A stretch of 64,000 nt of DNA, from NCBI GenBank assembly GCA_030704615.1, contig CM060734.1:23932001-23996000 (forward strand), given 5' to 3'. Below are positions 11,541 through 56,235 of this stretch, piece after piece. The notes beneath the pieces were generated by a model. The model saw only the letters and a program-made list of their open reading frames with translations. It ran no database searches and was not told the origin of the DNA. The stretch's first letter is position 1. Each line of letters begins with the position of its first letter. Source of the stretch: Takakia lepidozioides (lineage: Eukaryota > Plantae > Bryophyta). A program made the translations under genes and the position numbers.

Positions 11541-11664
11541 AGGACGTGAAAAGGAGAGAGAAGGAGAAAGAGCGGGGAAAGGGAGAGAGAAACCCTAAAG
11601 CAGAGCGCAGGGTCTTTGCTCTCACGGGGCTTCATGTTCGCCATTGCCCTGCACCATCTTGTCC

Positions 11665-38189: not shown

Positions 38190-39900
38190 ACATCATGTCA
38201 TCGGGAGGGACATCATCTTCTTCATCAAGCTCCAACTCCTGTCTATTGTCCTCATCGAAGTCACTATATTGACCCCTCTCAAGAGAGTCATGATCAGAAG
38301 CCGAATCATCATCCATATATTCATATGGCTCTTGCACGACCGGAGGAGGCACAATAAGATCTTCCTCTTCTTATACATCCTCATTGTCATCCTCATCATC
38401 ATCCTCATCGTCATCCTCATCATCATCCTCATCGCCATCCTCATCGTCATCCTCGTCTTTGTCATCATCCTCCTTCGACGCAATATTCGCATCAACCACT
38501 TGATCTCCTCCAACATTGTTCAAGGCAGTGTCATCAATTGCCTCTATCCACGAAGCATCGGCCACCTCGTCCACCTCAGTCACTTTGGCCACTTCGGCCT
38601 CATCACCACCCCAATGATTTGATCCCTTGCCATGGTAAATGCGTCTCTCTCTTGGCCTAGCATGCACAACCACCTTCCAATTGCCCGATCTAGTCTCGTC
38701 TTCGGAAAAAAAAGACTTGTTCCATGTCCTTCGGCCATGCAAATGGTTCATCGGAGATGCGAGTAGAGAGCGTGATCCTATCCGTGTTGACCCGCATGAA
38801 GCCACACTCATCATGCAAGATGGTTGCATTTGGCCATGCAATGTGGGGTTGGAACCACCTCCCCTTGAAAAGAATAGGGCGATGGTGATCATACTCGAGT
38901 TGCAAAATGGCATCAATCTCCCCAATATATTCAAGCTTGCTTCTCTCGGGTCGAGTGTCCCTTGTGCTTGACACTGAGTCTTGCCAATATGTTGCACACA
39001 AACCGGAGTCAAATGTGGTCTTCCGACCCATGTCAAGAGAGCGGATGCGGAAATGACGACCATGAATCCAAATTGAGGAGAATGAAATGGCATATTGAGA
39101 TGGCTCTCTCGCATGCTCTTGCACTAAAGGCGGCACCACCTCGCCCGCGGCCATCGCAACCTCAACTCCACTCCGGAGCCAATGGCGAAATGGTCTCAAT
39201 GGCTACATCTCCGTGGGCAAATCACGCGCGCCCAATGGGGCCATGATCCTGGATCCGCGCCGTCCTCGTGATGCTCGACCCAATTCCCTTGCACGTGTGC
39301 GTCTCCAAATTGTACTTGCTTCCAACCGCCGTGCATTCTCATCCGCATGTCTTACCTCCCACTCCACTATGCAAGGGGTGTTCTTCAATACAAAGTCATG
39401 TGCTTGCTCCACTTCGGTGTTCGATAGTTTCACCCTCCTTGATTTTTTGGGCAAAACCATGTCCTTGTTCCGCACATCATCCTCTTCCTTCCACATTGGA
39501 GGGGCCTCTTTGTCCACCCTTCTCATGTACTCCGTACATAACACCATAGCCTCTTGCAATGTGTACCCCTCCGCCATGCTACCCTCGGGATGTGCCTTTT
39601 GCCGCACATGTGCCTTGACCTCCTTCATGTAACGCTCTAGAAAGTACATCCACCAAGCATGGACCGGCCCGGCAATCTCTGCCTCTTCCACCAAGTGCAC
39701 TACCAAATGCACTTGGATGTCAAAGAAATTAGGGGGAAGATGCATCTCCAACATACACAAGACCGTGGCCGCCTCCTCTTTCATTCGTGGAAAATCCGCC
39801 TCGTCCATCTCTTTTGTGCAAAGCCAACGGAATAAATCACCAAGTCGATAGACGGCTTTTCGAATGCCCTCATGGAGTGTCCCTTGTATTGCAATAACGG
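38190..39900 (-). mobile_element. CACTA/EnSpm transposase, C-terminal part (DUF4218/DUF4216-like), frameshifted
   Basis: LEMHLPPNFFDIQVHLVVHLVEEAEIAGPVHAWWMYFLERYMK...PEGSMAEGY; TFDSG, YIGEIDAIL and DEPFAWPKDMEQVFF; acidic tail. Confidence 0.9.
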
Positions 39901-40142
39901 GCCGCAAGGCGAGCCCATTGGAGGGCTTCATGTGTGAGGTGTCCAGGTGGCGGGTGGGCAAGGCCATGACCTGACCATGTGTGTTGAGTCGCGGTGCCTT
40001 TAGCCCCGAATACACAGTCTCTAGGGTATGGGTTGTCATAGGAAGAGAGTTCAAGAGGACATGTGAGTGGACTTGAGTAGTAGGTGTGAGTGACTTGAAA
40101 GGAGGTGATAAGAAATTTGAGGATATTCGCCGGGATGGTGCT
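39900..40142 (-). other. PCIF1/CAPAM-like amino-methyltransferase domain within the LINE ORF
   Basis: Manual translation, same frame as the chromodomain: STIPANILKFLITSFQVTHTYYSSPLTCPLELSSYDNPYPRDCVFGAKGTATQHTWSGHGLAHPPPGHLTHEALQWA. Compare the PCIF1 pattern FASPLNC...D.YFGSRG...SGSFEANPPF. Confidence 0.65.
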
Positions 40143-40556
40143 ATGGGCATAGGCTTGAGCTGATTTGTCAGGGGTACGAGGTTTTTTAGTGGGGGTATTG
40201 CGTAAGTATCTGGCGACTATCCAGCATACTTCAGTGGCGAAGTCTTGCCTAGGGGGTTGAAGCTGATTAGTGTAGATGGCGGAGGCAGTATGTCGCTCCC
40301 AGAGCCATGTGATCCTTGTGTGAGAGATTGTTCCTACAAATTGTCCATGGAGTGTGTATATGTTAGTTACGGAATGGCTTGGGCAGAGGACAGGGTGGAT
40401 TTGGTCAATGTCTTTGTCAGGGTTACATTCGGAGATTGTTATCCGTATTTTTGGGGCAACAAGTGGGGTGTGGATGTATCTATCATCCCTTGATTGGGTT
40501 TGGGAGACATGTTGTTGGTGGAGGTGGGTTAGGTATTTAGTGTTAGTCGATTTGTG

Positions 40557-40754
40557 GAAATTAGTCAGGAGGGTGAGGTTGTGAACGGGGTCGCAATCTT
40601 CATGGTTGCCAAAGAGGTCATCTTCTATTTGTCATGTGTTATCTTCAATGGGATAGTCGGCCCATTTACAGAGATAGTATGTATCAACACATGTGGCGCC
40701 AAAGGCGTCCTGTGAAGTTTGGGTTTTGATGCCATGGATAGCCTCAATAACAAA
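40557..40754 (-). other. Chromodomain within the LINE ORF (one in-frame stop)
   Basis: Manual translation FVIEAIHGIKTQTSQDAFGATCVDTYYLCKWADYPIEDNT*QIEDDL...LLTNF. The TGA at 40634-40632 sits where chromodomains have Trp. Confidence 0.75.
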
Positions 40755-42845
40755 GGCTTCTGGTGTTCTGGGTTTGTTGGGTAGGAGTTAAGTGTCGGGG
40801 CGGTATGATTTGGAGAGCTAGGGGGGGGTACATTGGGATTGGGAGTGGAGGGGAGGTGGTGGTGGGGGGTGTCCTGTGTGGGATGTTCATGCATGTTATG
40901 GGAGTTTTTTAGCTGCTGGAGTATTGAGGTGGCTGGAGCTGTTCTGAATTTTGGGAGGAGGTCTTGCTGGTTGTGTGGGAAGAGTAGATAGGGGAGAGTC
41001 ACAATCTAGGGTACAGGAGACCGTTGGGTGGCAAAATAGAGAGCGGAGGTGTGATAGATATCTACATGTTTTGATGGTGGCTCGAGAATGTCTTTAGGGT
41101 GAATTGCGTGGGGGTTAAGAGCCGTGTCCCCGTGGCAGTGGTAAGTTGGGTAAGGCTAGAGATAATGCGTTGTTTGAAGTATGCCAAAATGAGTTTTTAC
41201 TGTCGTGGGTGGGAGTGTTCAAATTGTGTGTGGGAGGGGCTTTGAAGCCATGCACGTTCAAGTGGGGAGATGGTGTTGGGGTAGCCTGGTAGGTCGGTTT
41301 GTATACTGATCTTCAGTTGTCTTAGGAAAAACAGTGTGCGGGCGGTTGGGGAGTGAAGGCATGATTGGGGATAGAGGGTGGGAAGGGAATAAAGCCCATT
41401 GTATTTACCCGCTAGGTGTTTGAGGAGGCCTCTGAAAATGAGTCCTAAGCGACCATGGTTGTTTAGGGCTTCTTGTAATTGTGAGCCAAGGGTGCGGGCG
41501 TATGAGATGATGAGGCGACTAGAGCCTATGCCATAGCTATCCTGTGGGAGTTGGGTAAGAGCGTTCGGGGTGCTAGTGGGTAGGCCACATATATGTTTGG
41601 TGAGTTGAACAACATTTTTATCAATTTGTTTGATGTCTGGTAAAGAGAAGGGGGCGGCATATAAGGCGTATTGTACTTGGTTTTGAGGACTGTGTTGATG
41701 ATGGCAAGCTTGGGGTGGATGGCAACCGGAGCTTTGAGGAGGGCCAGGCTTTTGTTGGTTAGTTTAGAGATTGTTGTGGATTTTTGTATTTTCCATGTGA
41801 GTGAGGGGACCAGCTGAATGCCAAGATAGGTGTAGGGCTCGTCTGGGCCTAAGAAGGGGAAGGGTTTTTGTTGGTAATGTATGTGGAGTTTGCAGTGGGA
41901 GGCTATGGTGGATTTTGTGAGTTTGCTCCAATGTGTGGCGGCAGTGACCGCACATTTGTGGAGGCTGAGCGCCATGCCAGACCATTGGTTGAAGCGAGCA
42001 AATTTGTCCACCTGTCGGTTAAGATGTTGAGGTTTGTGTGCAAGTATGGCAAGGTCGTCAGCATAAGCTGCTACAGTGATTTCATTAGGGGAGGTTTTGT
42101 ATTGGTAACCAAGGTTTCCACGGGCGCGCCATCTGAGCAGGGGTTCAGGGAATATGATGAAGAGATAAGGGCTCAGAGTGTCACCTTGAATGGTTCCACG
42201 AAGGATGGGAATAGGAGGCGTGGAACCATAGTAAGAACCAGCGTATTCTGTGGTGTTGTTGGTGTAGATGTTACCAATGAATTGGATAGCATCTGTAGGG
42301 TATCCTAAATCTATCATGACGGCGAGCAGGCGGGGGTGGTCTAGGGATCCGAAGGCATTTTTTAAGTCGATGTAGAGAAGATAAATGTCATGTTTGGTGA
42401 GTTTTGCATCTTCCAAAGCTGACATGACATATTGTATCTGTCTGGTGGTACTCCGCGTAGCACAAAAACCTTCTTGTGGGTCGCTGAGGATCCGGTGTTG
42501 CTCCCCATAGGTAGACAACATTGTTATCAGGGTGCTAGTGAATAGTTTGTATATAGTGTTAGCTAGTGCGATAGGCCTGTAGTTACCAAGGTCCGTGGGG
42601 TCACCTTTTTTGAATAGTAGTATGGTCCTGCTATGCTTCCAAGAGTGTGGTATACGGTGGAGCTGGTAGCAGAGTTGGAAAAATTTAAAGAGGAGGTCAT
42701 GAAATTGGGGTTCGAGTGCTTGGAGGATGGCGTTGGGTATGAGGTCTGGGCCTGGCGCCTTGGCCTTGGATAGGTTTTTGAGGCATAAGTCATATAGGTC
42801 TCTTGTGAAGAGATTCAATATACGGTCTGTAGGGGGGCCGCGTGC

Positions 42846-44650
42846 TTTTAATCACCTTCATCCCACCGGACTTCAGGAAACTGGACAGTAGTCGTCGGCA
42901 CTTTGCATTGGCAGCTTGTAGGATGAGCAAACACCCATTGTCAGCCAAGAAGTTCCCATAGAACTTGAAGACCCAGGGCCAGTAGCGCTCGTCCCATTCA
43001 TTCCAGGCTGGAGTGACACCTTTCGGTGGAAGATCTGGGACTAGAAGCCCGTCTGGAATGTCCACAACAACGAGCTCGCATGCAAAGGGTTTTTTCTCTC
43101 CGTTCACCCACGATGGGCCTTTCCCAGCCTTCACCCCCCAAAGCAATTCAATTGAAATGACATTTGACCACACTGCAAGAACCAAGTGACAAGGAGGGGA
43201 GTGGATAAGGAATTTACCAGAGTGAGGAATGAAGACAATGTCTCCCAAGTTGGGGACTTCTCTTTGACTGTGTCGCCTTTCCTCCTTGATTCCATCATGT
43301 CCAAGAAGCTTTCGTTGACTGTCTTGTGTTGGTAGCCCGTGGCAACTCCTCTGCCAGGGTTAGGTAGGGCCTCGTATGGTTTGTCCGACAGAGCTAGTTG
43401 TGAACCCCTCTGAGCCCCTCCTGCCACAGCAGCCGCTGCCCGACCTTGTTCGCCATCTTTCTTTTTGTCCTTCTTCTTTCCACCCTTCTTTTTCGGGCTC
43501 TGATTTACAACTAGTTCCTTTGCTTTGAGAAGCCAGAGATCTCTCAACTACAGCTGCCTATCTGTCAGAGGAGCAAGAGCCTTTGCAATGTCATTCAAAT
43601 TTTGCAGGACGTTCTCCTCCTCGATTGTTCGGGCAATCAAGGTACCACCCACAGTCTTTGAAATGAGACCTGCTCCAGTCCTCCAGAATGCCCGCTGTGT
43701 ACATTGTTGTGTCGGGATTTGTCTTTGCCCAGCTGTCAATGAAGAATGGGTACGAGCTTAGAAAACCACCTAGAAAAAGTACTCCGTGGATATATCTGCG
43801 AAAACAAAACCAACAAATATCAGGAGAGTTCATAGGAAGACATGATAGCAGACACCATTCTTTTGTTGTAGCACTTAACAAAAAACAATCCAAGTGCAGG
43901 GTAAATTCATCCTTGCGTCAACGAAATCCTCTTTCCGTTTATGAAACAAGAGTTTGACACTTAAGAAATCCTTTTATAACGTTAGTCGTGGGCTCCCATC
44001 AAACAGGCTTGCGTCAACGCAAGCCTCATGCAGACCAGGTAAAAGTCCCGTTGCCTCAAAGTTTTTGCTACAAGGGAAACAATGCATAGCTGTACTTAAA
44101 ATTGTCACAACATACCCCTTCCTAATACGTAGTTCAAACTACCAATATATACTCCACACACTAGACAGGCTTGCATCAACGCAAGCCTAACCCTAGCCCA
44201 AAAACACTCGGGAGAAAGGTAGCCATGAGTAGGAGGGTCCGCAGGCTTGCGTTAACACAAGCCTCAATAGAGAAAGCTACTATCTTTAAGAACAGCTCAC
44301 AACATTAAAAAGCATGAAATGAAACCTGTATATGACTCGCTTCATCGCCTGCTCCCCATTGTACTGCGCATCGAACAAATTCGAACGGTGAATCCCACCA
44401 TCAACAACAAATTCGCGGAAGAACACATGTTCCCAAACTATCTCTTTTCCACCTCCTTATCCAGGTCTCGAATGACTCATCTGGTGTAGCAACGACTATC
44501 TTGAAGTCTGTAAGAGATTTCTCCATAACCTCCTCAGCCCTCTCCTCCAACTGCCACTCAAGTAACTTGGTTAGATTTTGCGAAAGCAGTCAAAGACATT
44601 CAAAACAGACATTGAAGACTTGTGAAATTCTTACCTGCGCCCAGAATGTG
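42846..44650 (-). pseudogene. Fragmented multi-exon gene ending in a beta-class N4C/N6A methyltransferase-like segment
   Basis: ELVVVDIPDG (DPPY-like, 43062-43048) then PAWN...WVFKFYGNFLADNGCLLIL. Splice-like sites at 44634 and 43217/43173. Cut by the LINE on one side and the Gypsy LTR on the other. Confidence 0.45.
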
Positions 44651-47202
44651 GTGTCAAGTTATTTTACCACTAGTGTGAAGTTAGCTAGGAAATAGCTAGC
44701 TTTTATATATTGACATTTGGGATTGACCCAATGTCAATCCAGGGGCCAATACATGTTTGGGCACATGGCATTGTTATCTTCACGACAGATCGCGGTGGGC
44801 TCATCTTTCTCGAGTTGAGCCTCACCGCGTCTAGCTATGGCGCCGTAGTGTGGATTCCCCATGGCGTGGGTTGCACTTGGCTCGACTTAATATATGAGTG
44901 ATGTTTTCATGTGCAAGTATATGAGTTAGAGAGAGCTTGTGTGCTTGTATTATTCCTTTCTTTATCACTCGAGAAAGATCAGCTCGAGTCTGTGAGTGCC
45001 AGGTTCGAGTTGTTTTGTAGCACTTGTGTTTTCATGAGAAGCGGTTCAGCCTAGAGTGTAGGGATCCGTGCATGAGCCTATCCACAGTGGATAGAGTGCA
45101 AAGGCAAATAGGTTGCAGGTTTGCAATGGATAGAAAGGCGGGTAGCCTATGTTGAAGAGCGGCGTTGCATAATTCAACGCTATGGCAACCAAGTTTGGGC
45201 TTCTAGTGTGAAGCGGAGGAGATGCTGGCCACGAGTGGGCGAACTGGTGGTCGTCTTCTTCAATTGCAAGCCGGGTTAAGGAGCTGCAGGAATGTGGGCT
45301 GTGCATGGGAAGCTAGCATGTTGCAGGTTGGAGATGATATGATCAGCTCCAGGTATTTCTGCCCGAAACTAGTTGTTGCAGGTAGATGAGGAGCAGCCGA
45401 ATGGTGGAGCTGCGAGGGGATGCATCGCAGCCCGTGGGAGCTTCAGCTCCAAGCTCATGAAGAGGTATGAGTGAGGAGAGGGGGGTTGGTCCCTCTTGTG
45501 TGCAAATCAGTGCACTTGTGAAGCATGTGCTGAGTTGGAGTTTCAATCTGAAACTCAGCAGTGTAAGGGCTCTTGGAGTGGCAAGAGCGGGGCTGGAAAG
45601 GCAGCAACGAGGCGCCCATGAGAAGTGCAGGTGCACCAAGTTTGTAAAGGTGTGTATTTTCAAATTTGTTTTTGTGAGCTTCATGAAGAAAAGGGAGCTT
45701 GTTGGGCAGCATATAGCTTGCTTGTTGAGTTGGAGGCACTTCTAGTGGGCCGAGAGAGCTCAGGAGTGCAAGGCGACGGGGTTGATGGCTCCGCAGAAGC
45801 CATAGCTCGTCGGCAGCAGGTGCTGGAGCAAACCCCAGCTCGGTAAGAGCTCGGGAACGCGTGGGAACGCCCAGGAACTCATGGGAACTCGTTGGGAGTG
45901 CCAGAGAACGCAGGGAATAGTGGCCGTGATGGGCTGTTGGGGCGGTATCATGAGATACCACGAGCCCAGGTCGTGATGATTGACCGTGACCGTTGACCGT
46001 GACCGTTGGAAATCGTGGTGCGGACACAACGGGTGGGCACGGTGACCAGATCGTGGGGATGGTGGGCCGTGAAGGCTCGTGGGAGTGGTACCACAGGGTA
46101 TCACTGGGCAGCCCGTGGCCAACGAGTGCCTAGGGCGGGCCGTGAGGAGTCGTGGCGGTTGGAGCCACGGAAGGCCGCGAACAGTTAGAGTGAAAAAAAA
46201 AAAAAAAAAACAAAAACAAAAAGAGGGACCTTGATGGGGAGGCTGGGCTCTGAAGAACAACGGTTTTGAGCTAGCTGATCCGGCAAAAAAGTCGGAATTG
46301 CCTCCCTGTTGCGTTTTAACAAAGGGGATTACTTCCTTGCAGGTAATCTTTTCTGGTTTTCAGCCCAATTCTTAACTATGGGGGAGACCAGCCTGCAGGT
46401 AATTCCTTTGGACAGAATGTTGTTGGGGCCTATATGTACCTCTATTTGCTCCATTTTTTAACCTTCAGTGAATGGCATGGTTTCCTGAGGTGGTTCCATT
46501 CGGAGGAATGTCTGGTGGACGTAAGAAGGCACTGGCGGACCCTGTGGAGGCTTTGCATGGGGCCTTGGAGGCAAAGTTTCATGAGCTCGTGGAGGGCGGT
46601 TTGAGGAGTGTCTACATGATACTCTCATGGTCATGCAAGTGAGAGAAGAGAGGAAAAAAAAAGGGTGTTGGGACGAGAGCGTGTTGGGGATAGGCATTGC
46701 TTTAGCTTCCCTTCCTCGTAGCTTTCCACCTTCTCTGTAGGCCGAGACCTTTCCATAGGTGGAGGCAAGAGTCAGTCCGGGTTTGGGCTGGGTTGCAGGA
46801 GTGACACTGTGGAGAGATTTTTGGTGTGGGGGAGTTGTTGTTTTCATTCTTGTGTTTGGATCCCCTCCACACCTGCATGCCATGCTAGTTTTGTGTGGGC
46901 GCTTGATTTTATAAGTGGTGGACTCGGGCTTGATCGCCGATCCTACCCTAGAGCATGCTGTCGATGGTGAGGCTGGGTTGATGACCAGTCAGACCATCTT
47001 TGTTTCTCCTGTGGTGAGGTTGGAGGTGATGACCAGCCAACCATAGGAATGCCTGCGGTGGATGCAGGTGCAGGTGCAGGCTATGTTAGGAACCTAGTAT
47101 TCCAAACCATAAGCCGCATCAGGATCTCTACCCGGATACCTTGTGGAGAGGGGGTTAGAGACATGTTCATGACCGGTTGAGTGTTAGTTTGTCAACACGG
47201 AG

Positions 47203-48340
47203 GTGCCACTAGTTGCTAGGGAAAGTGCCGGTATGAGCACTAGCAATACTAGCGGGTATATGAGACGAGGTGTGCGGTTTAGGCCACCTTCACCTCCTGT
47301 GTCTTCTACGGAAGGTTCTAATTCGGATTGTGAATCAGGAGGACTCACACTGGTGGTGCAAGTTATTTCCTTGCCATTGTTGTGGGACACGATGGAGGAG
47401 ATGTATGGAGCCACCAAGGGGCCACGAAGGTACTCTGGGGCAGTGGGCACCATTGAGTTGGATGATTTTATCCAAGAGTTTGATAGTTGGTGTGACTTGC
47501 AGCAAATGCGCAATCCACAACTGTTTACACCTTTTATGACATGGAAGGGACTGTTTCAGCACCTTGAGGGGCCGCCCATGGATGATTACCATGAGTTTAG
47601 GCGGGGGTACGATGTTGAGATCGATGGATGGAGGATGTACTGGTCACCCGACTATGTCTCCATCACTAAAGGAACAAGGGCAGCAGCCATACTGGCAGCT
47701 GCACCGGCAGCTTCCACGAGCAGTAGTGGGACTAGTGGTACAGAGGCTACGTCATCCACCCAAGCTACTGCTGCACCAGCACCAGTGGCGGTGCTTGCCT
47801 TCAACCCTATTGTGGAGTTCTTCGAAGAGTTGAGAAGGAACTACCAAGGGGTGAGGACAGAGAAGTTGAGGAGCTTGCAAGAGTTCCAACGGAAGCCTAC
47901 TGAGAGCTTGAGGGAGGCTTTTACTCGCATGAGGCGCTTGATTAATGTAACCCAAGGGGTTACAGAGGCTCAGGGAGTCCAGTTCTGGTACGGGATATTG
48001 GACAAGGAGCTGAGGAGAAGGGTGCGGGATGCAACTCTCCTACAAGCGGCCCAACCCACCTTAGCAAATGTGTTTTTGCTGGCAGAGCGGATAGAGCTCA
48101 ACATGGTGGAGGAACGAGTGGTCATCGTGGGATTTGCTAAGGAGGCACCACGAGGTAGTGGTGCTCTTAGCCAACCACTACCTCATCGTGCTCAAGGCAA
48201 CAAGGGGGCTTAGGTGAAGCCCAGGGAAGGGCAGAGAGGACCTCAGATGCAGGGGTCTCTCCCTTCATTTGCTGGCCAACAACGGGCGGATGTGGTGTGC
48301 TGGCCATGTGGAGGACCCCATGTCAAGAAGGATTGGGAGG
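47203..48340 (+). CDS. Gag with degenerate zinc knuckle
   Basis: LDDFIQEFDSWC and FQRKPTESLREAFTRM; CWPCGGPHVKKDW knuckle at ~48298-48336, after a frameshift. Confidence 0.8.
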
Positions 48341-48765
48341 AGTCAGCTTCCTATAGGCCTGGATGGCAGTCAGGGGAGGGCCGGCGTATGTAGCTCTCTG
48401 TGACGTTCATAGGAGGAGTTGCGGTTGCCCAGCGAGGCAAGATGCCAATACTGGCAACATTCACAGCTGTTGTGACTTGGCCTGGATAGTTGTTGGATGG
48501 AAACACTCATTTAGAGGATGTGTCACATCCGGGAGAGCAGGATGACATGTATGGTATGACGGAGTTGTCTGCCATGGTTGCTCACACTCCATTGTGGGGT
48601 TCGAGCAAGGATTTGCAGCGGGTTGCTGATTGTCATGTGCAACAAGCTTGGGTAGAGGCTTTTGTACCATCAAGAAAGGAGGATAGTGCGGGGATTGCCA
48701 CAGATCTACCTCAGTTGTCTCCATTGGACACCACACCAATCGTGTGGCAGTGTCCGGATGAAAGC

Positions 48766-49710
48766 ATTTGCCTTCTGGATTTGTTTGGCGGGATCAGCAC
48801 CGGATTGACTGCTGTTCTACAGGCAGGTGTACGAGTACGACGTTACCTGTATGTGGAGAGGGATGAGACTGCACGACGCGTCTCCCTCCGTCATGTTGCT
48901 CAGTTGGTGCAGTAGTACCCTGAGTTGTTGCCGGTGTCTACGGTTCATGGATATCAGTTGGCCTTGCCAGCAGACATCTCTTTGCTGGGGGCCCAGGATT
49001 TGGAGCGGGTTGGCTCCATTGATTTGGTAGTGGCAGGTTGGCCCTACCAAGGGCATTCATCAACTGGGCATGGCAATGGATTGCAAGACTCGAGGTCGGG
49101 TCTGTTTGGGAGATGGTGCGGGTTTTGCGCCACTTACAGCTTCATCAGGCTGTATCTCCAGCATACATCTTGGAGAATGTGCCACTGATGGGCGATTTTG
49201 GGACAGGGTGATGGCCAGTGTGCATCAGGTCCGGTCGTGGCTTGGGTCAGCAGTGTTGCTGAATGCAGCTGCAGTGGGGTCACGGACTCATCATCCACGG
49301 TTATGGTGGACTAACTTGATGTCACCCGCACTGCTTAAGCGTGCATTTGATGGGGTGTAGCGGCCAGCACACCTCACAGTGGATAGCATTTTGGATACAG
49401 GGAGGCAGTCTCAGCGTGTGAGACACGATGACCGTTCGCCTTTGGCAGTGGTCAACAAGGTGGATCAACCACGAGCAGCACTATCTACACTGCTCAGCTT
49501 CCCAGGATCGCATGCTGTCCGGGATAGTGGACCTGGCCTCCTGTGGGATGCTCAGTTGCAGCAGTTAGTGGAGCCTAATGCTGACGAGCGAGAGCGGGCT
49601 ATGGGTTTTCCCACTGGGACCATGGCGGTGCCTTCTCTTTTTGAGGCATCACGTCGTTAGGTGTTGGGGCAAGCAATGGATATAAATTGCTTGACCTGGA
49701 TTATCAGCTT
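48766..49710 (+). pseudogene. C5-cytosine DNA methyltransferase domain (disrupted)
   Basis: Motif I LLDLFGGI; II YVERD; IV DLVVAGWPYQG (PC to PY, TAC 49045-47); VI ILENV (ENV 49173-81); VIII HHPRLWWTNL; IX-X ERERAMGFP...LGQAMD. Confidence 0.9.
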
Positions 49711-50064
49711 GGCTATGGCTGAGCAACAAAAAGTGTGGAGTGCACTTCCCTTGACGGTCTCTCTGCCTACCGAGACGGTACAGGCAGTGAGTGGAGGCGA
49801 GCCAGTGAGGACCACGGGGTGTAGACATCCATGGCACACATGGGAGGTGCTCGAGGTTCAGAGGGAGTTGGCAGCCAAGGCGGCTGTGATGGATGAGGTT
49901 GGGGATTCTTCTCGGGTTGAGGAGGTCCTAAGGATGAGATGATGGGGCAAGATGAGGCCTTGTCATTGACTGAGCAGGCAGGAAGTACTGCTCATGAGGT
50001 TGCGGCATAGCAACCACGGGACGCGTCTCCTACCTCTAAGTCTGCTGGACTTAAGGTTGCAGTT

Positions 50065-51115
50065 ATGGAGGACAATTGGGAGCTTGACATTGGACCCATT
50101 GTCACTGGAGGAGAGAGACGACATATACGGCGGTTCCTGAGGGCTTACAAGAATTGCTTTGCCTTCAGTTTGAAGGATTTGGGAACACTGAAGGGTCAGG
50201 AGATTCGTATTGAGTTGGCCACGGACACGCCAATCTTTCGGAGACCCTATAGATACAGTGACATGGAGAGGTATTTGATTCAGATGAGGACTCAAGATCT
50301 CTGGGAGGTTGGTTTGGTGGAGCTCTCTGGTGGAGAGTATGCTTCAGCCACGGTGATGCCAGCCAAGAATGATGTCTATGGCAATTGGACGGAGAGACGT
50401 ATGTGCGGTGATTACCGGCCTGTAAATCGTTAGACCAAGTCCGATAAGTATGCCATGCCCACACCGGAGGAGATCTTTGATGCCATTGGGCATGCCAAGG
50501 TCTTTAGCACTTTGGACTTGCGGTCCGGATATCACCAGTTGCCGATCAAGGAGGCGGACAAGCAGAAGACGACATTTTGGGGGATCAATGAGCACGGGAA
50601 GGAATGCCTATATCAGTGGCGGTTCTTGCCATTCGGGCTTAAGAACGCTCCTGCAGAGTTCCGGAGAGTCATGGACATGATTCTAGCAGGGGCGGACTTT
50701 GCTCGGTGCTACATAGATGACATCATCATCTTTAGTGCTACGGTGGAGGAGCACGAGAGACACCTTCAGGTGGTGTTTGAGCGCTTGAGAGCGCACGGAT
50801 TGAAATTACATCCGGGGAAGTGCAAGTTCTTCCACAACCAGATTGAGTATCTGGGCCACATGATATATCCTGGAGGATTGGGGGTGCAACAGACTAAGGT
50901 AGAGGCCATCGCACAGATTCCACGTCCCACGAATGTGAGCCGAGTTCGAGCTTTCATGGGGTTGGCAAACTACTATAGACGGTTTGTCAAGGGATTTAGT
51001 ACTATTGCAAAGGCTCTAACCAAGCTGACCAAGGTAGACCAGGAGTGGCAGTGGGAAGATGAGCAAGAGCGACTTTTCAGGAGCTCAAGGCGAAGTTGAC
51101 CTCGGCGCCGATCTT
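50065..51115 (+). pseudogene. Gypsy reverse transcriptase; RNase H deleted
   Basis: RMCGDYRPVN, FSTLDLRSGYHQ, LPFGLKNAP, YIDDIIIFS and FMGLANYYRRFV. Sequence jumps from TSAPIL directly to the integrase linker. Confidence 0.95.
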
Positions 51116-51159
51116 GGGACGGGATACACCTGCTTCGAGTGTGGGAGGATGGTCGGGTG

Positions 51160-52448
51160 AGGATCGTGCCTCACCCAACACTGCGTGCACGGTTAGTGCG
51201 GCATGCCCATGAGGAGTTGGGGCATTTTGGAGTGCGATGCACTCGTAGTTTACTGCAGGGGCAGTATTGGTGGCGTGGTATGCACACAGAGGTGCAATAG
51301 TTCGTGGCTAGGTGCATGGTGTGTGACAGGGTGCGTGCTTCATTCAACGCCCCTACACCACAGTTGCATCCTTTACCCATCATGGGATTGGGCTACAGGT
51401 GGAGTCTTGACTTCGCAGGATCTTTGCCACTGACGATGCGTCACCACAGATATGTGTTGGTGATGGTGGAGCACTTCTCCAAGTGGATTGAGTTGGTTCC
51501 ATTGCCTGACAAGGCTAGTGAGGGGGCTACGTATGCATTCCTGCATCGTGTGCTTAGCCGATTCGGTGCTCCAGCTGAGGTACTCACGAACCAAGGGAGA
51601 GAGTTCTTGGGGGAGTTTCAGGCTTTGTGTGATAAAGCCTTGATAGACCACCGTACCACTTCTCGGAATCACCCTGAGGCCGATGGCTTGGCAGAGAGAG
51701 TGGTTCAGACAGTGAAGAGGGGTTTGCGCAAGTATGGCTTGCAAAAATGACTCCTAGGAGATTGGGATCTTCAGGTACCTTGGTAAGCCATGGGCTACAC
51801 GTTCTGCAAGCAAGCATCACTTGCCTCATTCTCACCGTATTTCCTTCTCTTTGGCCGAGAGCCGGATTTGCCTGCATCTATTCGTAGGGAGGCTGCAGTA
51901 GTCCTCAACCTTGATGATCCGGATGTGTGGACACAAGCATGTGCCCAGCGGGCAGAGTTGTTCAAGAGAGTCATGCCTATGGCTTTTGAGAATCTTGCTA
52001 TTGCCCAACACCGAGACACATTGAGGTATGCCACTATACGTGGAGGGGATATCGGCCAGGTGTTCGGCATTTCCACCCTGGGGACTATGTGTATCTGCAG
52101 CAGACAACGCCTACAACCTTGGATGTCACAACAGAACGTGTGATTCTAAGGGTCAGGGAGGTGTTGCCTTCAGGAGTGTTGATTCTGGAGGGTCGAGATG
52201 GCATGGTATGGAAGGACCATGTGCGTAATTGTGCGCCATATCACCTTCCACATGTGGATGGGAGGATAGATCCCAACCTTGCAGTGGTACCTGTAGGGTT
52301 GCGTTGCATGCTATGTGGGCATGCTCGTGGTGCCGTCACTATGTTGGTGTGTGATCGATGCTCAAGAGGTTGGCACATGAGATGCTTGACACCACCTCTT
52401 GAGAGGGTTCCTGATGGAGATTGGTTATGTCCACACTGCTTGGGATAG
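51160..52448 (+). pseudogene. Gypsy integrase (HHCC and rve core) with C-terminal PHD finger
   Basis: HAHEELGHFG...YWWRGM...CMVC; WSLDFAG; DGLAER. PHD CMLC...CDRCSRGWHMRCLTPPLERVPDGDWLCPHC has an intact C4HC3 (~52302-52440). Confidence 0.93.
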
Positions 52449-52708
52449 TGGCAGTGGATATGACTAGTGGCAGCTCACAAGGCATGGGAGGCCAAGCTCA
52501 TAGGAGTCAATACCCAAGATCTCAGGCTCAAATTCACAGGTTGCAAGACGACGACTAACGATGGGGCAACTCTTGTACCCGGCCTCTTGATCTATTGAGT
52601 TTGAGTGTAGTAGGGACAATGGTGGAGGACTTAGTGAGGCTATGGCCACTATCACATCTTGTGGCTACCTGGACTTAGAGGGACCTAAGCGCCAGCTAGG
52701 GGGGCGAT

Positions 52709-53045
52709 TGTGATGGACTAGTGGCAGCCTAGTGGTGGACTAGTGGCTGCACTAGTGGTGGCTAGTGGCAGCCTAGTGGTTGGACTAGTGGCTGCGCTAG
52801 TGGTGGACTAGTGACAACCTAGTGATGGACTAGTGGCTGCACTAGTGGTGGCTAGTGGCAGCCAAGTGATGAACTAGTGGCTGCACTAGTCGTGGCTAGT
52901 GACAGCCTAGTGATGGACTAGTGGTTGCACTAGTGGTGGCTAGTGGCAGCCTAGTGGTTGGACCAGTGGCTGCACTAGTGGTGACTAGTGGTTGTCTAGT
53001 GGCAGCCTAGTGGTGGACTAGTGGTGGACTAGTGATAGATTAGTG
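52709..53045. repeat. LTR-internal tandem array of ~30 CTAGTG subunits, ~11-bp period, 44-bp higher-order unit
   Basis: 27 exact CTAG plus 3 variants counted by eye between 52718 and 53040; GCAGC/GCTGC and GTG/ATG linkers alternate. Confidence 0.92.
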
Positions 53046-53710
53046 TTTGGTGTGCACATATGTTGTGTGGTTTTGGACAGTGATGTAGTTGTGTTGCGAT
53101 ATGTATGCGCACGACAGCTGTCAAGTTATTTTATCACTAGTGTGAAGTTAACTAGGAAATAGCTAGCTTTTATATATTGATATTTGGGATTGACCCAAGT
53201 GTCAATCCAGGGGCCAATACATGTTTGGGCACCTGGCGTTGTTATCTTCACGGCAGATCGCGGTGGGCTCATCTTTCTCGAGTTGAGCCTCACCGCGTCT
53301 AGCTATGGCGCCGTAGTGTGGATTCCCCATGGCGTGGGGTGCACTTGGCTCGACTTAATATATGAGTGATGTTTTCATGTGTAAGTATGTGAGTTAGAGA
53401 GAGCTTGTGTGCTTGTATTATTCTTTTCTTTATCATTGTGATGGACTAGTGGTAGCCTAGTGGTGGACTAGTGGCTGCACTAGTGGTGGCTAGTGGCAGC
53501 CTAGTGATGGATTAGTGGCTGTGTCGAGCGGCTTTTACTCACCCATCCCTTCGCTATCCGAGGTGGAAACTCATGGCAGAAAACCCGAGCGCTATAGTGT
53601 ATTGCCCTCCTCACGAGCATAGAGCTACATTTTCGTGCAGATGGGAGATCTGCCGGGTGATGGAGAAATATCACTACGTTTGATACCACCTGAAACCGGG
53701 GTCGGTATTT

Positions 53711-56235
53711 TTGGAGGAGGAAAGGAAGGATTCAAACGGAGTTGTAGTCGAAAGTATTGTTGTGCTCCACGATGATTTCGACTACGGCAGGGAATGGCGA
53801 GTTCCACCATCGGACAACGTCATATACAGGGTTGTTGGGGACTTCATTTGCCCGCCAAATGCGCCTTCTATCCTAGCGCCTTCCACAAAAGAATCCGCGA
53901 ATCAGAGAGTGGGCACCTCAAAGAGAGAAGTCCACAACGAAGTAAATCCAGAGCCGAACCCATCAATGAAGACGAGCGAGAACCGGGTTGTTCACAACCT
54001 GTCCGACTCCGACGAGGTCATGGAAGTTCCGAGATCATCTTGGAGATCAGGCAAGTCCTCAATGGACATCAGCGGACGAGGGAGTCATATTCCCAGCACG
54101 AACACATCAGTTCGATCCATTCTTGAAATTCTTCAAGGGCTTCACATGGAGGGACACCGCACGGAGCTGGCTGGGCTGGACTACAACAAGTTCGCCATTA
54201 AATCCGTTACATGCCTTCCCGCAGACGTCGACGGTAATATGTTCTTTGAGTTCCCTCCTCGAATGGACTATTCGAGGGCGTCCGGAATGTTGACAGATAT
54301 GGATAGGAAACATGATGGTCATCCTTGGTGCATCACCAAAACCACCAGCATGAAGATACTCGATGGTGTGCGGGTGCGCTACGTTGTATGTGCGGGCGCG
54401 TTGCGGTGTTTCTCCCCAACTTGCTTCCACTTTAAATCCAGAGGTCACAGGAACGAGACGGATTGGACAGGCACAACTCATCAACCATTTTGTGCTCAGG
54501 AGAAGGTTCCAAACTCCACATTTAAGTGTGCGCATTGCAAAGAACCACCACATTGCATGTCTGTTTGTAATGCCAAGCAGTTCTATGTGTTGCACCGTTT
54601 CCCTGACCTCACACGAGCTTGCATACACGTTGGTTCCCATTGTCACAAATTGGCGAGGGGGAACTCGCGGGAGGCTACCCACGAGGCAGAGCAGCTCATT
54701 CAAGAGGAGGTTAGGTTGAGACCTGGTGCCAAACCCAAACAGATACAGCTGCAGACCGCCCATAAGATGGCATTGGCCAGAATTATGTCGGAAGACGGCT
54801 CCGACAGAGTTCCTCTCGATGAGAAGGAAATAGAGGCATTGCTGGAGTCGGTGTCCCACGTCTGTTCACCGAATGTCCGAAACCACATTGTCTCCTACAA
54901 ACAGAAAATTGGGCGTGGCTCGGATATGCACTCCATTCTGGAGGTGAAGCGATGATGTGGATATGGCTACATTCATGGAAATAGGTTTCTTGGACAAGGG
55001 ACTGAGGCAGATCGTTGTTTCATATTCAAAATGTCCACGTGTGGGCTTGGCAGCGGCGTCGAACTGGTCGACCGGATGACGAGTGGGGACTTGTCAAACA
55101 GTTGGGTCATGTTCGACCATATCAAGCGAATTACAAATCACCTGTGGGTGACAATGGTTGCACATGTCTACGACACCCACTGCAGGATGCTCATGACAAT
55201 TGCTATTTGTGAGATGAAAGGAGAGGACACACAATCAGAGATGCTTCTTTGGCAGGGAATAAACAAACAGATGGCTAGGGCGGGATTGCCCCCTCCCAAT
55301 TTCCGTGGTTTCATGGCGGACAACGCACATGCAAATTGGGCTGCCATCCGAAGGGTGTACGGGGAAGACCCCAATGTTCCGATGGAAGGCAAGGAGAGAT
55401 CTTGTGGGTTCCATTTTCTGCCGAGCTTGTCGCAGTACACAACTCGGCTCGTGGCGCCAGATTTCAGAGAGGAGCACCGTTCCATGTGTCTTGCGTGGAA
55501 GCGTGCTCCCACCTTGGATGATGCAGAGACACAATTTGCATGTATACGGGCTTGGTGGACAACGTCAGGTGCTGTAAAGAAATCAAACGAGGGAGCAATG
55601 GTCAGTTGGCTAGCATGGTGGCATTATCGTTGATTCAGGGAATGCCGGAGCCTCCGGGCGTCTGGCCTGTTGCACCGGGTAACAACCTCTCTCAGAATGA
55701 AGCAGATGCTCTTTCTGCAGCATGATTTCGAATGGTGCAACGCACAGACGTCCCGGCCCATTCGTTTCCAGTTCCTCAGACCCAACCATTGCAGACTACT
55801 CGGTCCAGTAGAGACGGATTGGACAATTCTGCACATCCCACAATGCGATTCGGAAGAGTGAAGAGACGACACCCTCCTAACAAGTTGAATGAGACTCGGA
55901 TTGCCAATGCTCTTGGGATGGCTTGCACTATTCAGAGCTCTGTGGACGTACCCCCACCCGGCCTTGGGCGTGTTTATCAGATGGCAACGGTCGGCTCAGC
56001 TGTACGCGACGACGTATACACAATTACGATTGGAGTGGAGCCGACTTGCAATTGTACGGACTTCTCGTTGATGGAAGCAAAGAAGGGGTCAAAGTATTAT
56101 CCGTGCAAGCATCTGTATTACATTTACTTGAAGAGGTTGAGGATGAACTTGACCATTGATGACTTTATTCATGCACTCGCGTTGAGCGTGAACGAGCTGC
56201 ACAAACTCCTCAGCCGGGATTCCAGAAATCATTGA
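53711..56235 (+). mobile_element. Mutator-like (MULE) transposase pseudogene: GCM-like Cys-rich domain, DDE core, SWIM finger
   Basis: DGHPW...CAGALRC...C..C..HVGSHCH; WVMFDH; FMADNAHANWAAIRRVY...CGFHF; SWIM CNCTDF...PCKHLY. Confidence 0.8.

What the first reader, a model, noticed from the sequence alone, without database searches (positions are those of the whole stretch)
44652..53520. Gypsy retrotransposon encoding its own C5 DNA methyltransferase plus a PHD reader
Seen: C5-MTase motifs I, II, IV, VI, VIII, IX and X in order at 48766-49710, co-oriented between gag and RT, inside the LTRs. An intact C4HC3 PHD finger follows integrase. Known: DNMT-carrying retrotransposons were reported in dinoflagellates and charophyte algae (de Mendoza et al. 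2018), and PHD fingers bind histone H3 tails. Inference: the host looks like a land plant, where I know of no description of such elements. The family may methylate its own cDNA and use the PHD to choose insertion sites. This copy is dead: catalytic Cys to Tyr, stops, RNase H deleted, no protease recognised.
Basis: partly seen in the sequence, partly recalled or inferred. Interest (0 to 1): 0.93.

Follow-up and report, generated by a model that had tools for sequence, protein, structure and literature searches.

The report
Dead DNMT3-PHD gypsy retrotransposon copy
This is a decayed copy of a jumping gene that carries its own DNA-methylating enzyme and a histone-reading finger. The kind was described in 2018 from one alga, and here it proves to be an abundant, conserved family in a liverwort-like land plant and its relatives.

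Summary
Window 44652-53521 holds a Ty3/gypsy-type retrotransposon with the order gag, DNMT3-like C5-methyltransferase, RT, integrase, PHD finger.

This copy is dead:
- The protease and RNase H are deleted.
- The catalytic Cys is replaced by Tyr (49045-47).
- There are about ten stops and several frameshifts.

It is not a one-off capture:
- The same collinear element, with PR and DNMT in one ORF and PCQ intact, occurs in Calypogeia fissa. It also occurs in about 20 Marchantia polymorpha gene models, in Sphagnum and in Closterium.
- Chlorophyte relatives carry the same DNMT and PHD in another order.
- In the host's own sequencing run, about 49,000 contig pieces cover the whole stretch, DNMT included. 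About 99% of depth reads a Cys codon where this copy has Tyr.

The "LTRs" are really split, permuted repeats (A...B-GC-A-B). Relatives show 4-bp target duplications, a conserved polypurine tract before B, and a self-priming site after A.

The kind is known (KnitGypsy-Dnmt3, de Mendoza 2018). I found no paper describing it in land plants. This scan has already found and followed up the same family and the same repeat layout on other DNA of this genome.

Methylation of its own cDNA and PHD-guided targeting remain untested inferences.

The parts
44652..44967 (+). Repeat A1 (316 nt, TG...CA): the left end of the element; in reverse-transcription terms it is the 3' part of the LTR (end of U3, R, U5)
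   Evidence: 96.5% identical to 53119-53435. The homologous A repeats in L005, L002 and L004 start the element next to 4-bp target duplications.
44803..44815 (+). Site in mid-A (ATCTTTCTCGAGT) complementary to the primer-binding site; likely the start of the transcript if the element self-primes
   Evidence: 13-nt perfect complement, reached by 0 of 5000 shuffles. The same pairing, with compensated sequence changes, occurs in three other loci.
44967..44979 (+). Primer-binding-site-like sequence (ACTCGAGAAAGAT) directly after A1, of the self-priming (Tf1-like) type rather than a tRNA type
   Evidence: There is no TGG... tRNA-type site.
44980..47202 (+). Long leader; only the stretch from about 46820 to 47070 is conserved with relatives, and no conserved ORF was found
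   Evidence: blastn and tblastx against the leaders of L005, L002 and L004.
47203..48213 (+). gag ORF (336 aa, intact)
   Evidence: Weak Retrotrans_gag hit. It is 59% identical to the C. fissa gag, with 56 homologues in Marchantia, Calypogeia, Sphagnum and metagenomes.
48214..48333 (+). Remnant of the CCHC knuckle, ending at the junction of a deletion that removed the protease
   Evidence: Residues 1-247 of the C. fissa PR-DNMT ORF (with DSGAQ) have no counterpart. Contigs of other copies run off as loose ends at 48333-48335.
48334..49885 (+). DNMT3-like C5 cytosine methyltransferase domain (motifs I-X at 48766-49705), broken by 5 stops, 2 frameshifts and a Cys-to-Tyr change
   Evidence: The family profile matches DNMT3A/B/C at E 1e-24. 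Catalytic motifs are conserved in 33 family members.
49045..49047 (+). TAC (Tyr) codon where the family has the catalytic Cys of motif IV (PCQ)
   Evidence: In host run X1, 99 contigs (98.6% of depth) read another letter at 49046, giving a Cys codon.
50170..51078 (+). Reverse transcriptase, with a stop at 50431
   Evidence: RVT_1 E 1.8e-30. 75% identical to the C. fissa RT.
51078..51118 (+). Site of the RNase H deletion
   Evidence: About 220 residues of the relative (RT_RNaseH and RT_RNaseH_2) have no counterpart. Loose ends of other copies lie at 51068-51115.
51118..52047 (+). Integrase (H2C2 zinc finger plus DDE core), with stops at 51298 and 51748
   Evidence: Integrase_H2C2 E 1.3e-11 and rve E 2.9e-12. 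76-84% identical to C. fissa.
52305..52439 (+). PHD finger (C4HC3, intact) at the C-terminal end of integrase
   Evidence: PF00628 E 7.7e-11. The nearest solved PHDs are CHD4, KDM5A/B PHD1, ATXR5, DPF3, PHF21A, AIRE and UHRF1.
52677..52707 (+). Conserved polypurine-tract-like 30-mer (…AGCTAGGGGGGCGA) directly before B1
   Evidence: Nearly identical in the window, C. fissa, M. polymorpha and a metagenome contig.
52708..53116 (+). Repeat B1 (the 5' part of the LTR in reverse-transcription terms); holds a 30-unit array of an 11-nt motif (52710-53045) and ends ...GCACGACA
53117..53118 (+). GC dinucleotide between the B1 end (CA) and the A2 start (TG); the centre of the palindrome ACAGCTGT
   Evidence: C. 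fissa has the same CA-GC-TG; M. polymorpha and L004 have AC in that place.
53119..53435 (+). Repeat A2
53436..53521 (+). Repeat B2, truncated. Its first 72 nt equal the start of B1 with 1 mismatch, and the tail ending in CA is lost, so the right end and the target duplication of this copy cannot be read

Best explanation
SHOWN. Window 44652-53521 is a non-functional copy of a Ty3/gypsy-type retrotransposon family. Intact members encode gag, then one polyprotein in the order protease, DNMT3-like C5-DNA-methyltransferase, RT, RNase H, DDE integrase, PHD finger. The family is highly repeated in the host. It is conserved, with catalytic motifs intact, in liverworts (Calypogeia, Marchantia), Sphagnum mosses and the charophyte Closterium. 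Chlorophyte algae hold a sister group with the order PR-RT-RH-DNMT-INT-PHD. Integrated copies have the layout A - coding - PPT - B - (G/A)C - A - B. The ends read TG...CA and, in relatives, are flanked by 4-bp target duplications. A 12-13-nt site right after A1 pairs with mid-A.

INFERRED.
(1) Replication. Minus-strand synthesis is self-primed, as in Tf1, and plus-strand synthesis starts at the PPT. The cDNA should therefore be (B-A)-coding-(B-A). The genomic layout is a rotation of that form. This implies the two cDNA ends are joined and the integrase opens the CA-NN-TG site inside the LTR.
(2) The DNMT3-like domain travels with RT in the polyprotein and most likely methylates the new cDNA or the fresh insertion.
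(3) The PHD resembles readers of unmodified H3K4. It most likely tethers integrase to silent, H3K4-unmethylated chromatin, as chromodomains do for chromoviruses.

This particular copy can do none of this. Its private changes are mostly transitions enriched at CHG and CG sites, as expected for a methylated, silenced insertion.
For: Anatomy and lesions.

Family-wide DNMT:
- The C. fissa locus L005 has PR and DNMT in one 795-aa ORF with PCQ intact, followed by RT, RH, INT and PHD.
- About 20 M. polymorpha gene models, Sphagnum and metagenome proteins are 48-92% identical over the DNMT.
- Loci L001 and L002 give collinear hits.
- Motifs are conserved in 33 domains: PCQ in most, ENV in about 28.

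Host copies: 49,114 contig pieces from run X1 cover all 30 bins. 98.6% of depth at 49046 gives a Cys codon. One-letter length differences lie at the two DNMT frameshift places. Loose ends lie at both deletions. The window has A or T where other copies have G or C at 169 places, against 93 the other way. Of the 23 best-supported such places, 11 are CHG and 4 are CG, against 18% and 13% of all cytosines.

DNMT3 type: DNMT3A/B/C score E 1e-24, DRM 1e-13 to 1e-10, DNMT2 and M.HhaI 1e-7.

PHD class.

Repeat layout: seen in the window plus L005, L002 and L004, with target duplications AGGC, ACAT and AATG. Conserved PPT. Self-priming complement with compensated changes, reached by 0-1 of 5000 shuffles.

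Domain orders and tree.

The known Klebsormidium type has the same repeat layout.
Against: - No Klebsormidium sequence could be fetched, so kinship with KnitGypsy-Dnmt3 rests on shared architecture and repeat layout, not on an alignment.
- No cellular plant DNMT3 was in the tree. 'DNMT3-like' rests on best matches to solved structures.
- The tree is a quick, midpoint-rooted one built on a subset of rows.
- The only published assay of a streptophyte Gypsy-DNMT3 enzyme showed no activity in yeast and was called inconclusive.
- The substrate and timing of methylation, the PHD ligand and the joined-end integration route are all inferences.
- The right end and target duplication of the window copy itself are lost.
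- The host is inferred to be a liverwort from the relatives and from earlier notes, not identified.
Confidence: 0.9

Rival explanations
1. One-off capture: a host DNMT3 gene or pseudogene fragment landed by chance inside a single ordinary gypsy copy.
For: Only this copy is visible in the window. Pfam on its pieces is below threshold.
Against: The same gag-PR-DNMT-RT order occurs in C. fissa, M. polymorpha, Closterium and metagenome contigs, with DNMT in frame with PR. The host run covers the DNMT as densely as RT and integrase.
Confidence: 0.01
2. The DNMT-like domain is kept for something other than DNA cytosine methylation. It might methylate RNA, or act structurally or by binding DNA within the replication complex.
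For: The KnitGypsy-Dnmt3 domain gave no DNA methylation in yeast. de Mendoza et al. raise RNA methylation for LINE-borne DNMTs. Motif X is said to be poorly conserved in the Klebsormidium members.
Against: All catalytic motifs of DNA C5-methyltransferases, including PCQ, ENV and the RxR of motif VIII, are conserved across the family. The best matches are the DNA enzymes DNMT3A/B, far ahead of the RNA enzyme DNMT2. The yeast result was inconclusive, because human DNMT3B failed in the same assay.
Confidence: 0.15
3. The liverwort family acquired its DNMT independently of the Klebsormidium family, as a convergent capture of DNMT3 by a different gypsy lineage.
For: DNMT capture has happened repeatedly. 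The domain sits at different places in the chlorophyte and streptophyte groups.
Against: The rare A-coding-B-A-B layout combined with a DDE integrase is shared with KnitGypsy-Dnmt3. The DNMTs of the liverwort, Sphagnum, Closterium and chlorophyte elements are much closer to each other (33-92% identity, E down to 1e-62 between groups) than to DNMT3A. They split into a streptophyte group and a chlorophyte group.
Confidence: 0.12
4. The terminal repeats are plain LTRs, and the array after the 3' LTR is chance or target DNA.
For: A alone looks like a canonical TG...CA LTR. B2 in the window is short and made of an 11-nt array.
Against: B2 copies the start of B1 (72 nt, 1 mismatch). The same A...B-A-B layout occurs in three other loci from other species. 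There B1 and B2 are 92-100% identical, and 4-bp target duplications flank the A1 start and the B2 end, not the A2 end.
Confidence: 0.02

Closest known systems
KnitGypsy-Dnmt3 of Klebsormidium nitens (de Mendoza et al. 2018, PMC5890265)
   Same: Both are gypsy-type elements with a DDE integrase and a non-rearranged DNMT3-type domain inside Pol. Both have the 'A-coding-B-A-B' repeat layout. The paper notes this in its Fig. 4c legend, referring back to the layout spelled out for SymbioDIRS-Dnmt3 in the Fig. 1e legend. Host copies are silenced.
   Different: The hosts here are land plants (liverworts, Sphagnum) plus Closterium. The PHD finger is not mentioned in the paper's text. Copy number in this host is very high, whereas the paper says K. 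nitens has fewer copies than Symbiodinium.
Chlorophyte DNMT-PHD gypsy elements (Haematococcus, Monoraphidium, Chromochloris gene models; many metagenome contigs)
   Same: They carry the same DNMT lineage (33-39% identity over about 330 aa in the three members compared, against E about 1e-9 for DNMT3A with a single sequence), the same integrase-PHD fusion and a gypsy RT/RH.
   Different: The DNMT sits between RNase H and integrase, not between protease and RT. Some add a G-patch or Tudor domain. I saw no A...B-A-B repeats in the two loci I looked at. I found no paper that describes them.
SymbioDIRS-Dnmt3 (dinoflagellates)
   Same: DNMT3-type domain in Pol and an A-coding-B-A-B layout.
   Different: It has a tyrosine recombinase rather than a DDE integrase, a DIRS-type RT, an unrelated host, and no target duplications are expected.
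Mammalian DNMT3A/3B catalytic domain
   Same: Best solved-structure match (E 1e-24 with the family profile), same motif order, and the same RxR...W.N motif VIII region.
   Different: No PWWP or ADD domain. The histone reader (PHD) sits about 900 residues away, after integrase. The region between motifs VIII and IX differs. Activity is untested.
Chromoviruses (gypsy elements with a chromodomain on integrase)
   Same: A chromatin-reader domain is fused to the C-terminus of a gypsy integrase, presumably to steer integration (established knowledge for chromoviruses).
   Different: The element also carries a writer.
Tf1/sushi-group self-priming and PAT/Ngaro split direct repeats
   Same: A site just after the 5' repeat pairs with a site inside it, as in Tf1 self-priming. 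The repeat layout matches the split direct repeats of PAT/Ngaro (my own knowledge of those families).
   Different: Tf1 has ordinary LTRs. PAT/Ngaro use a tyrosine recombinase and make no target duplication.

Membership tests
Ty3/gypsy (Metaviridae-type) LTR retrotransposon | Domain order PR-RT-RH-INT (RT before integrase) with gypsy-type RT and RNase H | tested here: met
   In the window RT precedes integrase. Intact relatives have PR, RVT_1, RT_RNaseH/RT_RNaseH_2, Integrase_H2C2 and rve in that order. PR and RH are deleted in this copy.
Ty3/gypsy (Metaviridae-type) LTR retrotransposon | Two identical LTRs at the ends, a tRNA primer site and a PPT next to the 3' LTR | tested here: not met
   The layout is A...PPT-B-GC-A-B. 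The PPT lies before B, not before A2, and the primer site is self-complementary rather than tRNA-like. This departs from the usual gypsy anatomy but is a family trait.
Ty3/gypsy (Metaviridae-type) LTR retrotransposon | DDE integrase leaving short target-site duplications next to TG...CA ends | tested here: met
   4-bp duplications AGGC, ACAT and AATG occur in three relatives. This cannot be checked in the window copy because B2 is truncated.
C5 cytosine DNA methyltransferase (PF00145) | Motifs I, IV (PCQ), VI (ENV), VIII (RxR) and X in order, and a Pfam score above the gathering cut-off | tested here: inconclusive
   For the window copy the motifs are present in order, but Cys is replaced by Tyr and the best piece scores 18 bits against a cut-off of 22. 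Intact family members pass: 33-47 bits, with PCQ and ENV present.
DNMT3 subfamily | Catalytic domain closest to DNMT3A/B, with unrearranged motif order (unlike DRM) | tested here: met
   The profile search gives DNMT3A/B/C at 1e-24, DRM at 1e-13 to 1e-10 over only half the domain, and DNMT2 and HhaI at 1e-7. The order I to X is unrearranged. No tree with cellular plant DNMT3 was made.
DNMT3 subfamily | N-terminal PWWP and/or ADD reader domains | tested here: not met
   Pfam finds none in any family polyprotein. The only reader domain is the PHD after integrase.
Gypsy-DNMT3 retrotransposons (KnitGypsy-Dnmt3 type) | DNMT3-type domain inside the Pol ORF of a gypsy element | tested here: met
   PR and DNMT share one ORF in C. 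fissa. M. polymorpha has DNMT-RT-RH in one gene model, and Closterium has PR-DNMT-RT-RH in one.
Gypsy-DNMT3 retrotransposons (KnitGypsy-Dnmt3 type) | DIRS-like repeat layout A-coding-B-A-B | tested here: met
   Seen in the window, L005, L002 and L004. The paper's figure legends describe the same layout.
Gypsy-DNMT3 retrotransposons (KnitGypsy-Dnmt3 type) | Sequence kinship (DNMT and RT) with the Klebsormidium copies | not testable with these tools
   No Klebsormidium protein appeared in the three capped searches, and no Klebsormidium genome is among the collections.
PHD finger (PF00628) | C4HC3 zinc-ligand pattern and a Pfam score above the cut-off | tested here: met
   42.3 bits against a cut-off of 24, full-length match 1-47. 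All eight ligands are present.
PHD fingers that read unmodified H3K4 | Closest to known H3K4me0 readers, with no Trp two residues before the His that forms the methyl-lysine cage in BPTF and ING2 | tested here: inconclusive
   The best solved matches are CHD4, KDM5A/B PHD1, ATXR5, DPF3, PHF21A, AIRE and UHRF1. The residue two before His is Gly (sequence ...RGWHMRC). The ligand classes of those proteins come from my own knowledge. No binding test or model was made.

The most novel reading that the evidence does not exclude
A gypsy lineage carrying both a DNMT3-type writer and an H3K4me0-type PHD reader has been inherited through the green lineage since before chlorophytes and streptophytes split. 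It still makes up a large repeat family in liverworts. Its replication needs the methyltransferase (methylating cDNA or the new insertion so that it enters silent chromatin on its own terms). It also uses an integrase that inserts a joined-end cDNA opened at a palindrome inside the LTR. If so, element-borne DNMT3 activity could have shaped bryophyte methylomes, and could even have exchanged with the host's DNMT3 genes.
Probability: 0.25. Interest if true: 0.8.

Novelty: new member of a known kind. Interest (0 to 1): 0.5.

Why it matters
Retrotransposons that carry the enzyme normally used to silence them are known from only a few algae, and their purpose is unknown. This finding shows the streptophyte type is an abundant, conserved family in land plants, including the genetic model Marchantia polymorpha. 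There its members sit unrecognised among "hypothetical protein" gene models. That makes the open question testable: Marchantia offers knock-outs, methylomes and chromatin maps. The family also inflates counts of DNMT genes in bryophyte annotations. It combines three unusual traits in one element: writer plus reader, self-priming, and permuted LTRs with a DDE integrase. The copy in this window is only a dead witness, and the scan has already reported the family from other parts of this genome.

Tried and rejected
- Pfam on the separate DNMT pieces gave only one sub-threshold PF00145 hit, and none for the pieces holding motifs I-II, VI, VIII or IX-X. Pfam alone would not have confirmed the finding.
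Pieces were searched apart, as the tools require.
- Klebsormidium sequences did not turn up in the three capped protein searches.
- The ESM Atlas look-up only said "C5 methylase".
- The target duplication of the window copy cannot be read. The flanks TGTGG and TTGTG around A1 and A2 do not match, and B2 lacks its tail.
- The 2.2-kb leader has no conserved ORF, and only about 250 nt before gag is conserved.
- The two chlorophyte loci (L006, L007) showed no A...B-A-B or LTR pair within the DNA fetched. I did not pursue this.
- C. fissa locus L001 is too decayed to show the repeats.
- Host identity: run and organism names are coded, and no near-identical protein was in the database (best gag hit 65%). 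"Liverwort" remains an inference.
- The careful tree did not finish. Only the quick tree is reported, with 65 of 132 qualifying rows left out at random.
- No structure prediction or complex prediction was run. The sequence matches to solved DNMT3 and PHD structures were already significant.

Full report
**What is in the sequence**

Two direct repeats of 316 and 317 nt (A1 44652-44967, A2 53119-53435) are identical in 306 of 317 columns and read TG...CA. Between them, all on the + strand, lie:
- an intact 336-aa gag ORF at 47203-48213 (weak Retrotrans_gag hit);
- a stretch with C5-methyltransferase motifs;
- RT (RVT_1, E 1.8e-30);
- integrase (Integrase_H2C2 E 1.3e-11; rve E 2.9e-12);
- an intact C4HC3 PHD finger at 52305-52439 (PF00628 E 7.7e-11).

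Three-frame translation shows motif I (ICLLDLFGG) starting at 48766 and motif X (VLGQAMD) at 49661-49705.

**Is the methyltransferase real?**

Pfam on the separate pieces gives only one sub-threshold PF00145 hit (18 bits, cut-off 22). The homology searches are decisive.

An exhaustive phmmer search with the 141-aa piece 48490-48912 found 153 relatives. Among them were proteins of Calypogeia fissa and Marchantia polymorpha, and long polyproteins with PF00145 next to RT, RNase H, integrase and PHD.

One C. fissa locus (L005) holds a nearly intact element. It has gag, then a 795-aa ORF with a protease (LLDSGAQ) and a full DNMT domain with PCQ intact, then RT, RNase H, integrase and PHD. The one departure in that DNMT domain is K for E in motif VI (ILKNVP).

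tblastn of that ORF covers window 48334-49885 in three frames with a joint E of 5e-149. Identity is 51-63% there, 75% in RT, 76-84% in integrase and 73% in the PHD part.

**How this copy is broken**

- Stops lie at 48391, 48487, 48913, 49358, 49658, 49940, 50431, 51097, 51298 and 51748. Seven of the ten are TAG.
- A TAC (Tyr) codon at 49045-47 stands where the family has the catalytic Cys.
- Frame changes lie near 49104, 49197-99, 49929 and 52044-46.
- The first about 250 residues of the PR-DNMT ORF, protease included, are missing before 48334.
- About 220 residues with RNase H are missing between 51078 and 51118.

I made no repaired frame and no consensus. Pieces were searched apart.

**Not a one-off capture**

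A search with the C. fissa DNMT region found 39 proteins of 437-1391 aa. These include about 20 M. polymorpha gene models (Mp_4g09160, Mp_8g17980, Mp_6g11220 and others, all "hypothetical"), further C. fissa proteins, Sphagnum fallax and S. troendelagicum proteins, and metagenome proteins. They are 48-92% identical over the DNMT.

Pfam places the DNMT after gag and PR and before RT-RH in Marchantia. The window's pieces hit two further loci (C. fissa L001, M. polymorpha L002) in the same order.

In 33 family DNMT domains the catalytic motifs are kept: GWPCQ in most, ENV in about 28, and SRAHRxRLWWTN nearly throughout.

The host itself gives the most direct test. In run X1, 49,114 contig pieces at least 80% alike lie on 47200-52450, filling all 30 bins, the DNMT as densely as RT and integrase. 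The same run shows that this copy's lesions are private to it:
- At 49046, 99 contigs (98.6% of summed depth) carry another letter, which makes a Cys codon.
- Many copies differ by one letter in length at 49104 and at 49197/49199, the two DNMT frameshift places.
- The first letter of the RT stop at 50431 differs in 71 contigs.
- Contigs run off as loose ends at 48333-35 and at 51068-51115, the two deletions.

The window copy has A or T where other copies have G or C at 169 places, against 93 the other way. Of the 23 best-supported such places, 11 are CHG and 4 are CG, against 18% and 13% of all cytosines in the stretch. This is a small sample, but it is what deamination of methylated cytosines in a silenced insertion would give.

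**What kind of methyltransferase and PHD**

With a single family sequence the best solved-structure matches are DNMT3A/3B/3C (E about 7e-10). With a 14-sequence profile they reach 1e-24 to 1e-25. Plant DRM scores 1e-13 to 1e-10 over half the domain only, and DNMT2 and M.HhaI score about 1e-7. Motif order is unrearranged. No PWWP or ADD domain occurs.

The PHD finger's nearest solved relatives are CHD4 PHD1/2, KDM5A and KDM5B PHD1, ATXR5, PHF12, DPF3, PHF21A, AIRE and UHRF1. From my own knowledge, most of these read unmodified H3K4 or H3R2. In BPTF and ING2 a Trp two residues before the His builds the methyl-lysine cage. The window sequence (RGWHMRC) has Gly at that place. I therefore expect an H3K4me0-type reader. 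This is an inference.

**The ends are not plain LTRs**

Directly after A2 comes B2 (53436-53521). Its first 72 nt equal, with one mismatch, the start of B1 (52708-53116), which lies directly before A2. B1 holds a 30-unit array of an 11-nt motif.

The same A1 - coding - B1 - A2 - B2 layout occurs in C. fissa L005 (B copies 100% identical), M. polymorpha L002 and metagenome contig L004. In those three, 4-bp target duplications (AGGC, ACAT, AATG) flank the start of A1 (TG) and the end of B2 (CA). So B2 belongs to the element, and a DDE integrase made the insertion. B1 and A2 are joined as ...CA-(G/A)C-TG..., which in the window is the palindrome ACAGCTGT. In the window copy B2 has lost its tail, so its own duplication cannot be read.

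Two further conserved signals show how the cDNA should look:
- A 30-nt polypurine-type tract (...AGCTAGGGGGGCGA), nearly identical in all four loci, ends exactly at the start of B1.
- The 12-13 nt spanning the A1 end (window 44967-44979) are perfectly complementary to a site in mid-A (44803-44815). The same pairing exists in the other three loci with different, compensated sequences, and 0-1 of 5000 shuffles reach it.

The second signal is the signature of Tf1-type self-priming. There is no tRNA-type site.

Reverse transcription should then give (B-A)-coding-(B-A). The integrated form is that DNA rotated. It looks as if the two ends had been joined (A end to B start, which is exactly the A2|B2 junction) and the molecule re-opened at the CA-NN-TG site inside the LTR. 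This is inference. It is the same reading that other follow-ups of this scan reached on other elements of this genome.

**Comparison with what is known**

de Mendoza et al. 2018 described DNMT-carrying retrotransposons in Symbiodinium (DIRS and LINE types) and in the charophyte Klebsormidium nitens. In Klebsormidium, unrearranged DNMT3-type domains sit in the Pol ORF of a gypsy element. [quoted passage not shown]

Their survey included no liverwort; the non-seed land plants shown in the retrieved rows were Physcomitrella and Selaginella. The Klebsormidium enzyme gave no methylation in yeast, which the authors call inconclusive. They suggest cDNA methylation as the likely role for the DIRS-type elements.

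A 2026 preprint refers to "streptophytes (Gypsy-DNMT3)" in passing, with no land-plant data in its text.

Searches for Marchantia/liverwort plus DNMT3 plus retrotransposon, for the Marchantia gene identifiers, and for green-algal LTR elements with DNMT or PHD found no description. The library lacks most subscription journals, so absence is not proof.

**Wider distribution**

A search with the DNMT region of a metagenome polyprotein found 104 long polyproteins. These include gene models of the chlorophytes Haematococcus lacustris, Monoraphidium neglectum and Chromochloris zofingiensis, with the order PR-RT-RH-DNMT-INT-PHD. It also found Closterium (a zygnematophyte) proteins with PR-DNMT-RT-RH, the order seen in liverworts.

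In the three members compared, the chlorophyte-type DNMTs are 33-39% identical to the C. fissa domain over about 330 residues (E down to 1e-62).

A quick maximum-likelihood tree was built from 67 of 132 qualifying rows, midpoint-rooted, with SH-aLRT support only. It splits the DNMTs into two groups, each with support 99. One holds Closterium, Calypogeia, Sphagnum and Marchantia. The other holds all named chlorophytes. The two groups match the two domain orders.

This fits long vertical persistence in the green lineage with one internal move of the DNMT. It needs a rooted tree with cellular DNMT3 and with Klebsormidium, which I could not build.

**Verdict**

It is wrong about the plain LTRs and too generous about novelty.

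The element fits the known Gypsy-DNMT3 kind. It extends that kind to land plants and adds a PHD reader, self-priming and permuted LTRs to its description. The same family and the same repeat layout have already been followed up by this scan on other DNA of the same genome.

Noticed in passing
window 52710-53045 and 53438-53519: The B repeat of this host's family holds a 30-unit array of an 11-nt motif (GTGGTGGACTA / CTAGTGGCAGC). The B repeats of the C. fissa, M. polymorpha and metagenome relatives are only 98-121 nt and have no array. So the U3-like part of the LTR has expanded here.
   Followed up: partly
window 11644-14260 (+): Two long ORFs (466 and 258 aa) match Importin-beta N-terminal and Exportin-7-like TPR repeats (E 2e-82). 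This is a host exportin-7-like gene with unusually long exons, or a processed copy.
   Followed up: no
window 35037-36728 (+): A 563-aa ORF with an integrase core (rve, E 1e-6), only 23-26% identical to the integrase of the DNMT element. This is a second, unrelated LTR-type element.
   Followed up: no
window 39203-40150 (-) and 41526-42818 (-): An ORF with DUF4218 (E 8e-34, a domain of CACTA-type transposases) and a 430-aa RT ORF (RVT_1, E 6e-30). The neighbourhood is a patchwork of transposons. Earlier notes of the scan mention a LINE with extra domains at 39900-40754.
   Followed up: no
window 53711-54955 (+): A 414-aa ORF directly downstream of the element has no Pfam match. It is Cys- and His-rich in its middle part.
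   Followed up: no
window 43908-44266: Four copies of a 25-nt near-palindrome (CAGGCTTGCGTCAACGCAAGCCTCA) lie just upstream of the element, spaced 76-162 nt apart.
   Followed up: no
L006 1-2923 (Haematococcus lacustris): Next to the DNMT-PHD element lies another gypsy-type gene model whose integrase carries both a chromodomain and a PHD finger.
   Followed up: no
P0319 (Monoraphidium neglectum) and P0090/P0266/P0271 (metagenome): Some chlorophyte-type DNMT-PHD polyproteins add a Tudor-like domain after the PHD, or a G-patch between DNMT and integrase. These are further reader or RNA-binding modules in the same lineage.
   Followed up: no
L005 8070-8109 and 18025-18080 (Calypogeia fissa): This young element (A copies 99% identical, B copies 100%) sits inside a short-unit satellite (…AAGCGCC…GTGAAGGCGCTTA…).
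   Followed up: no
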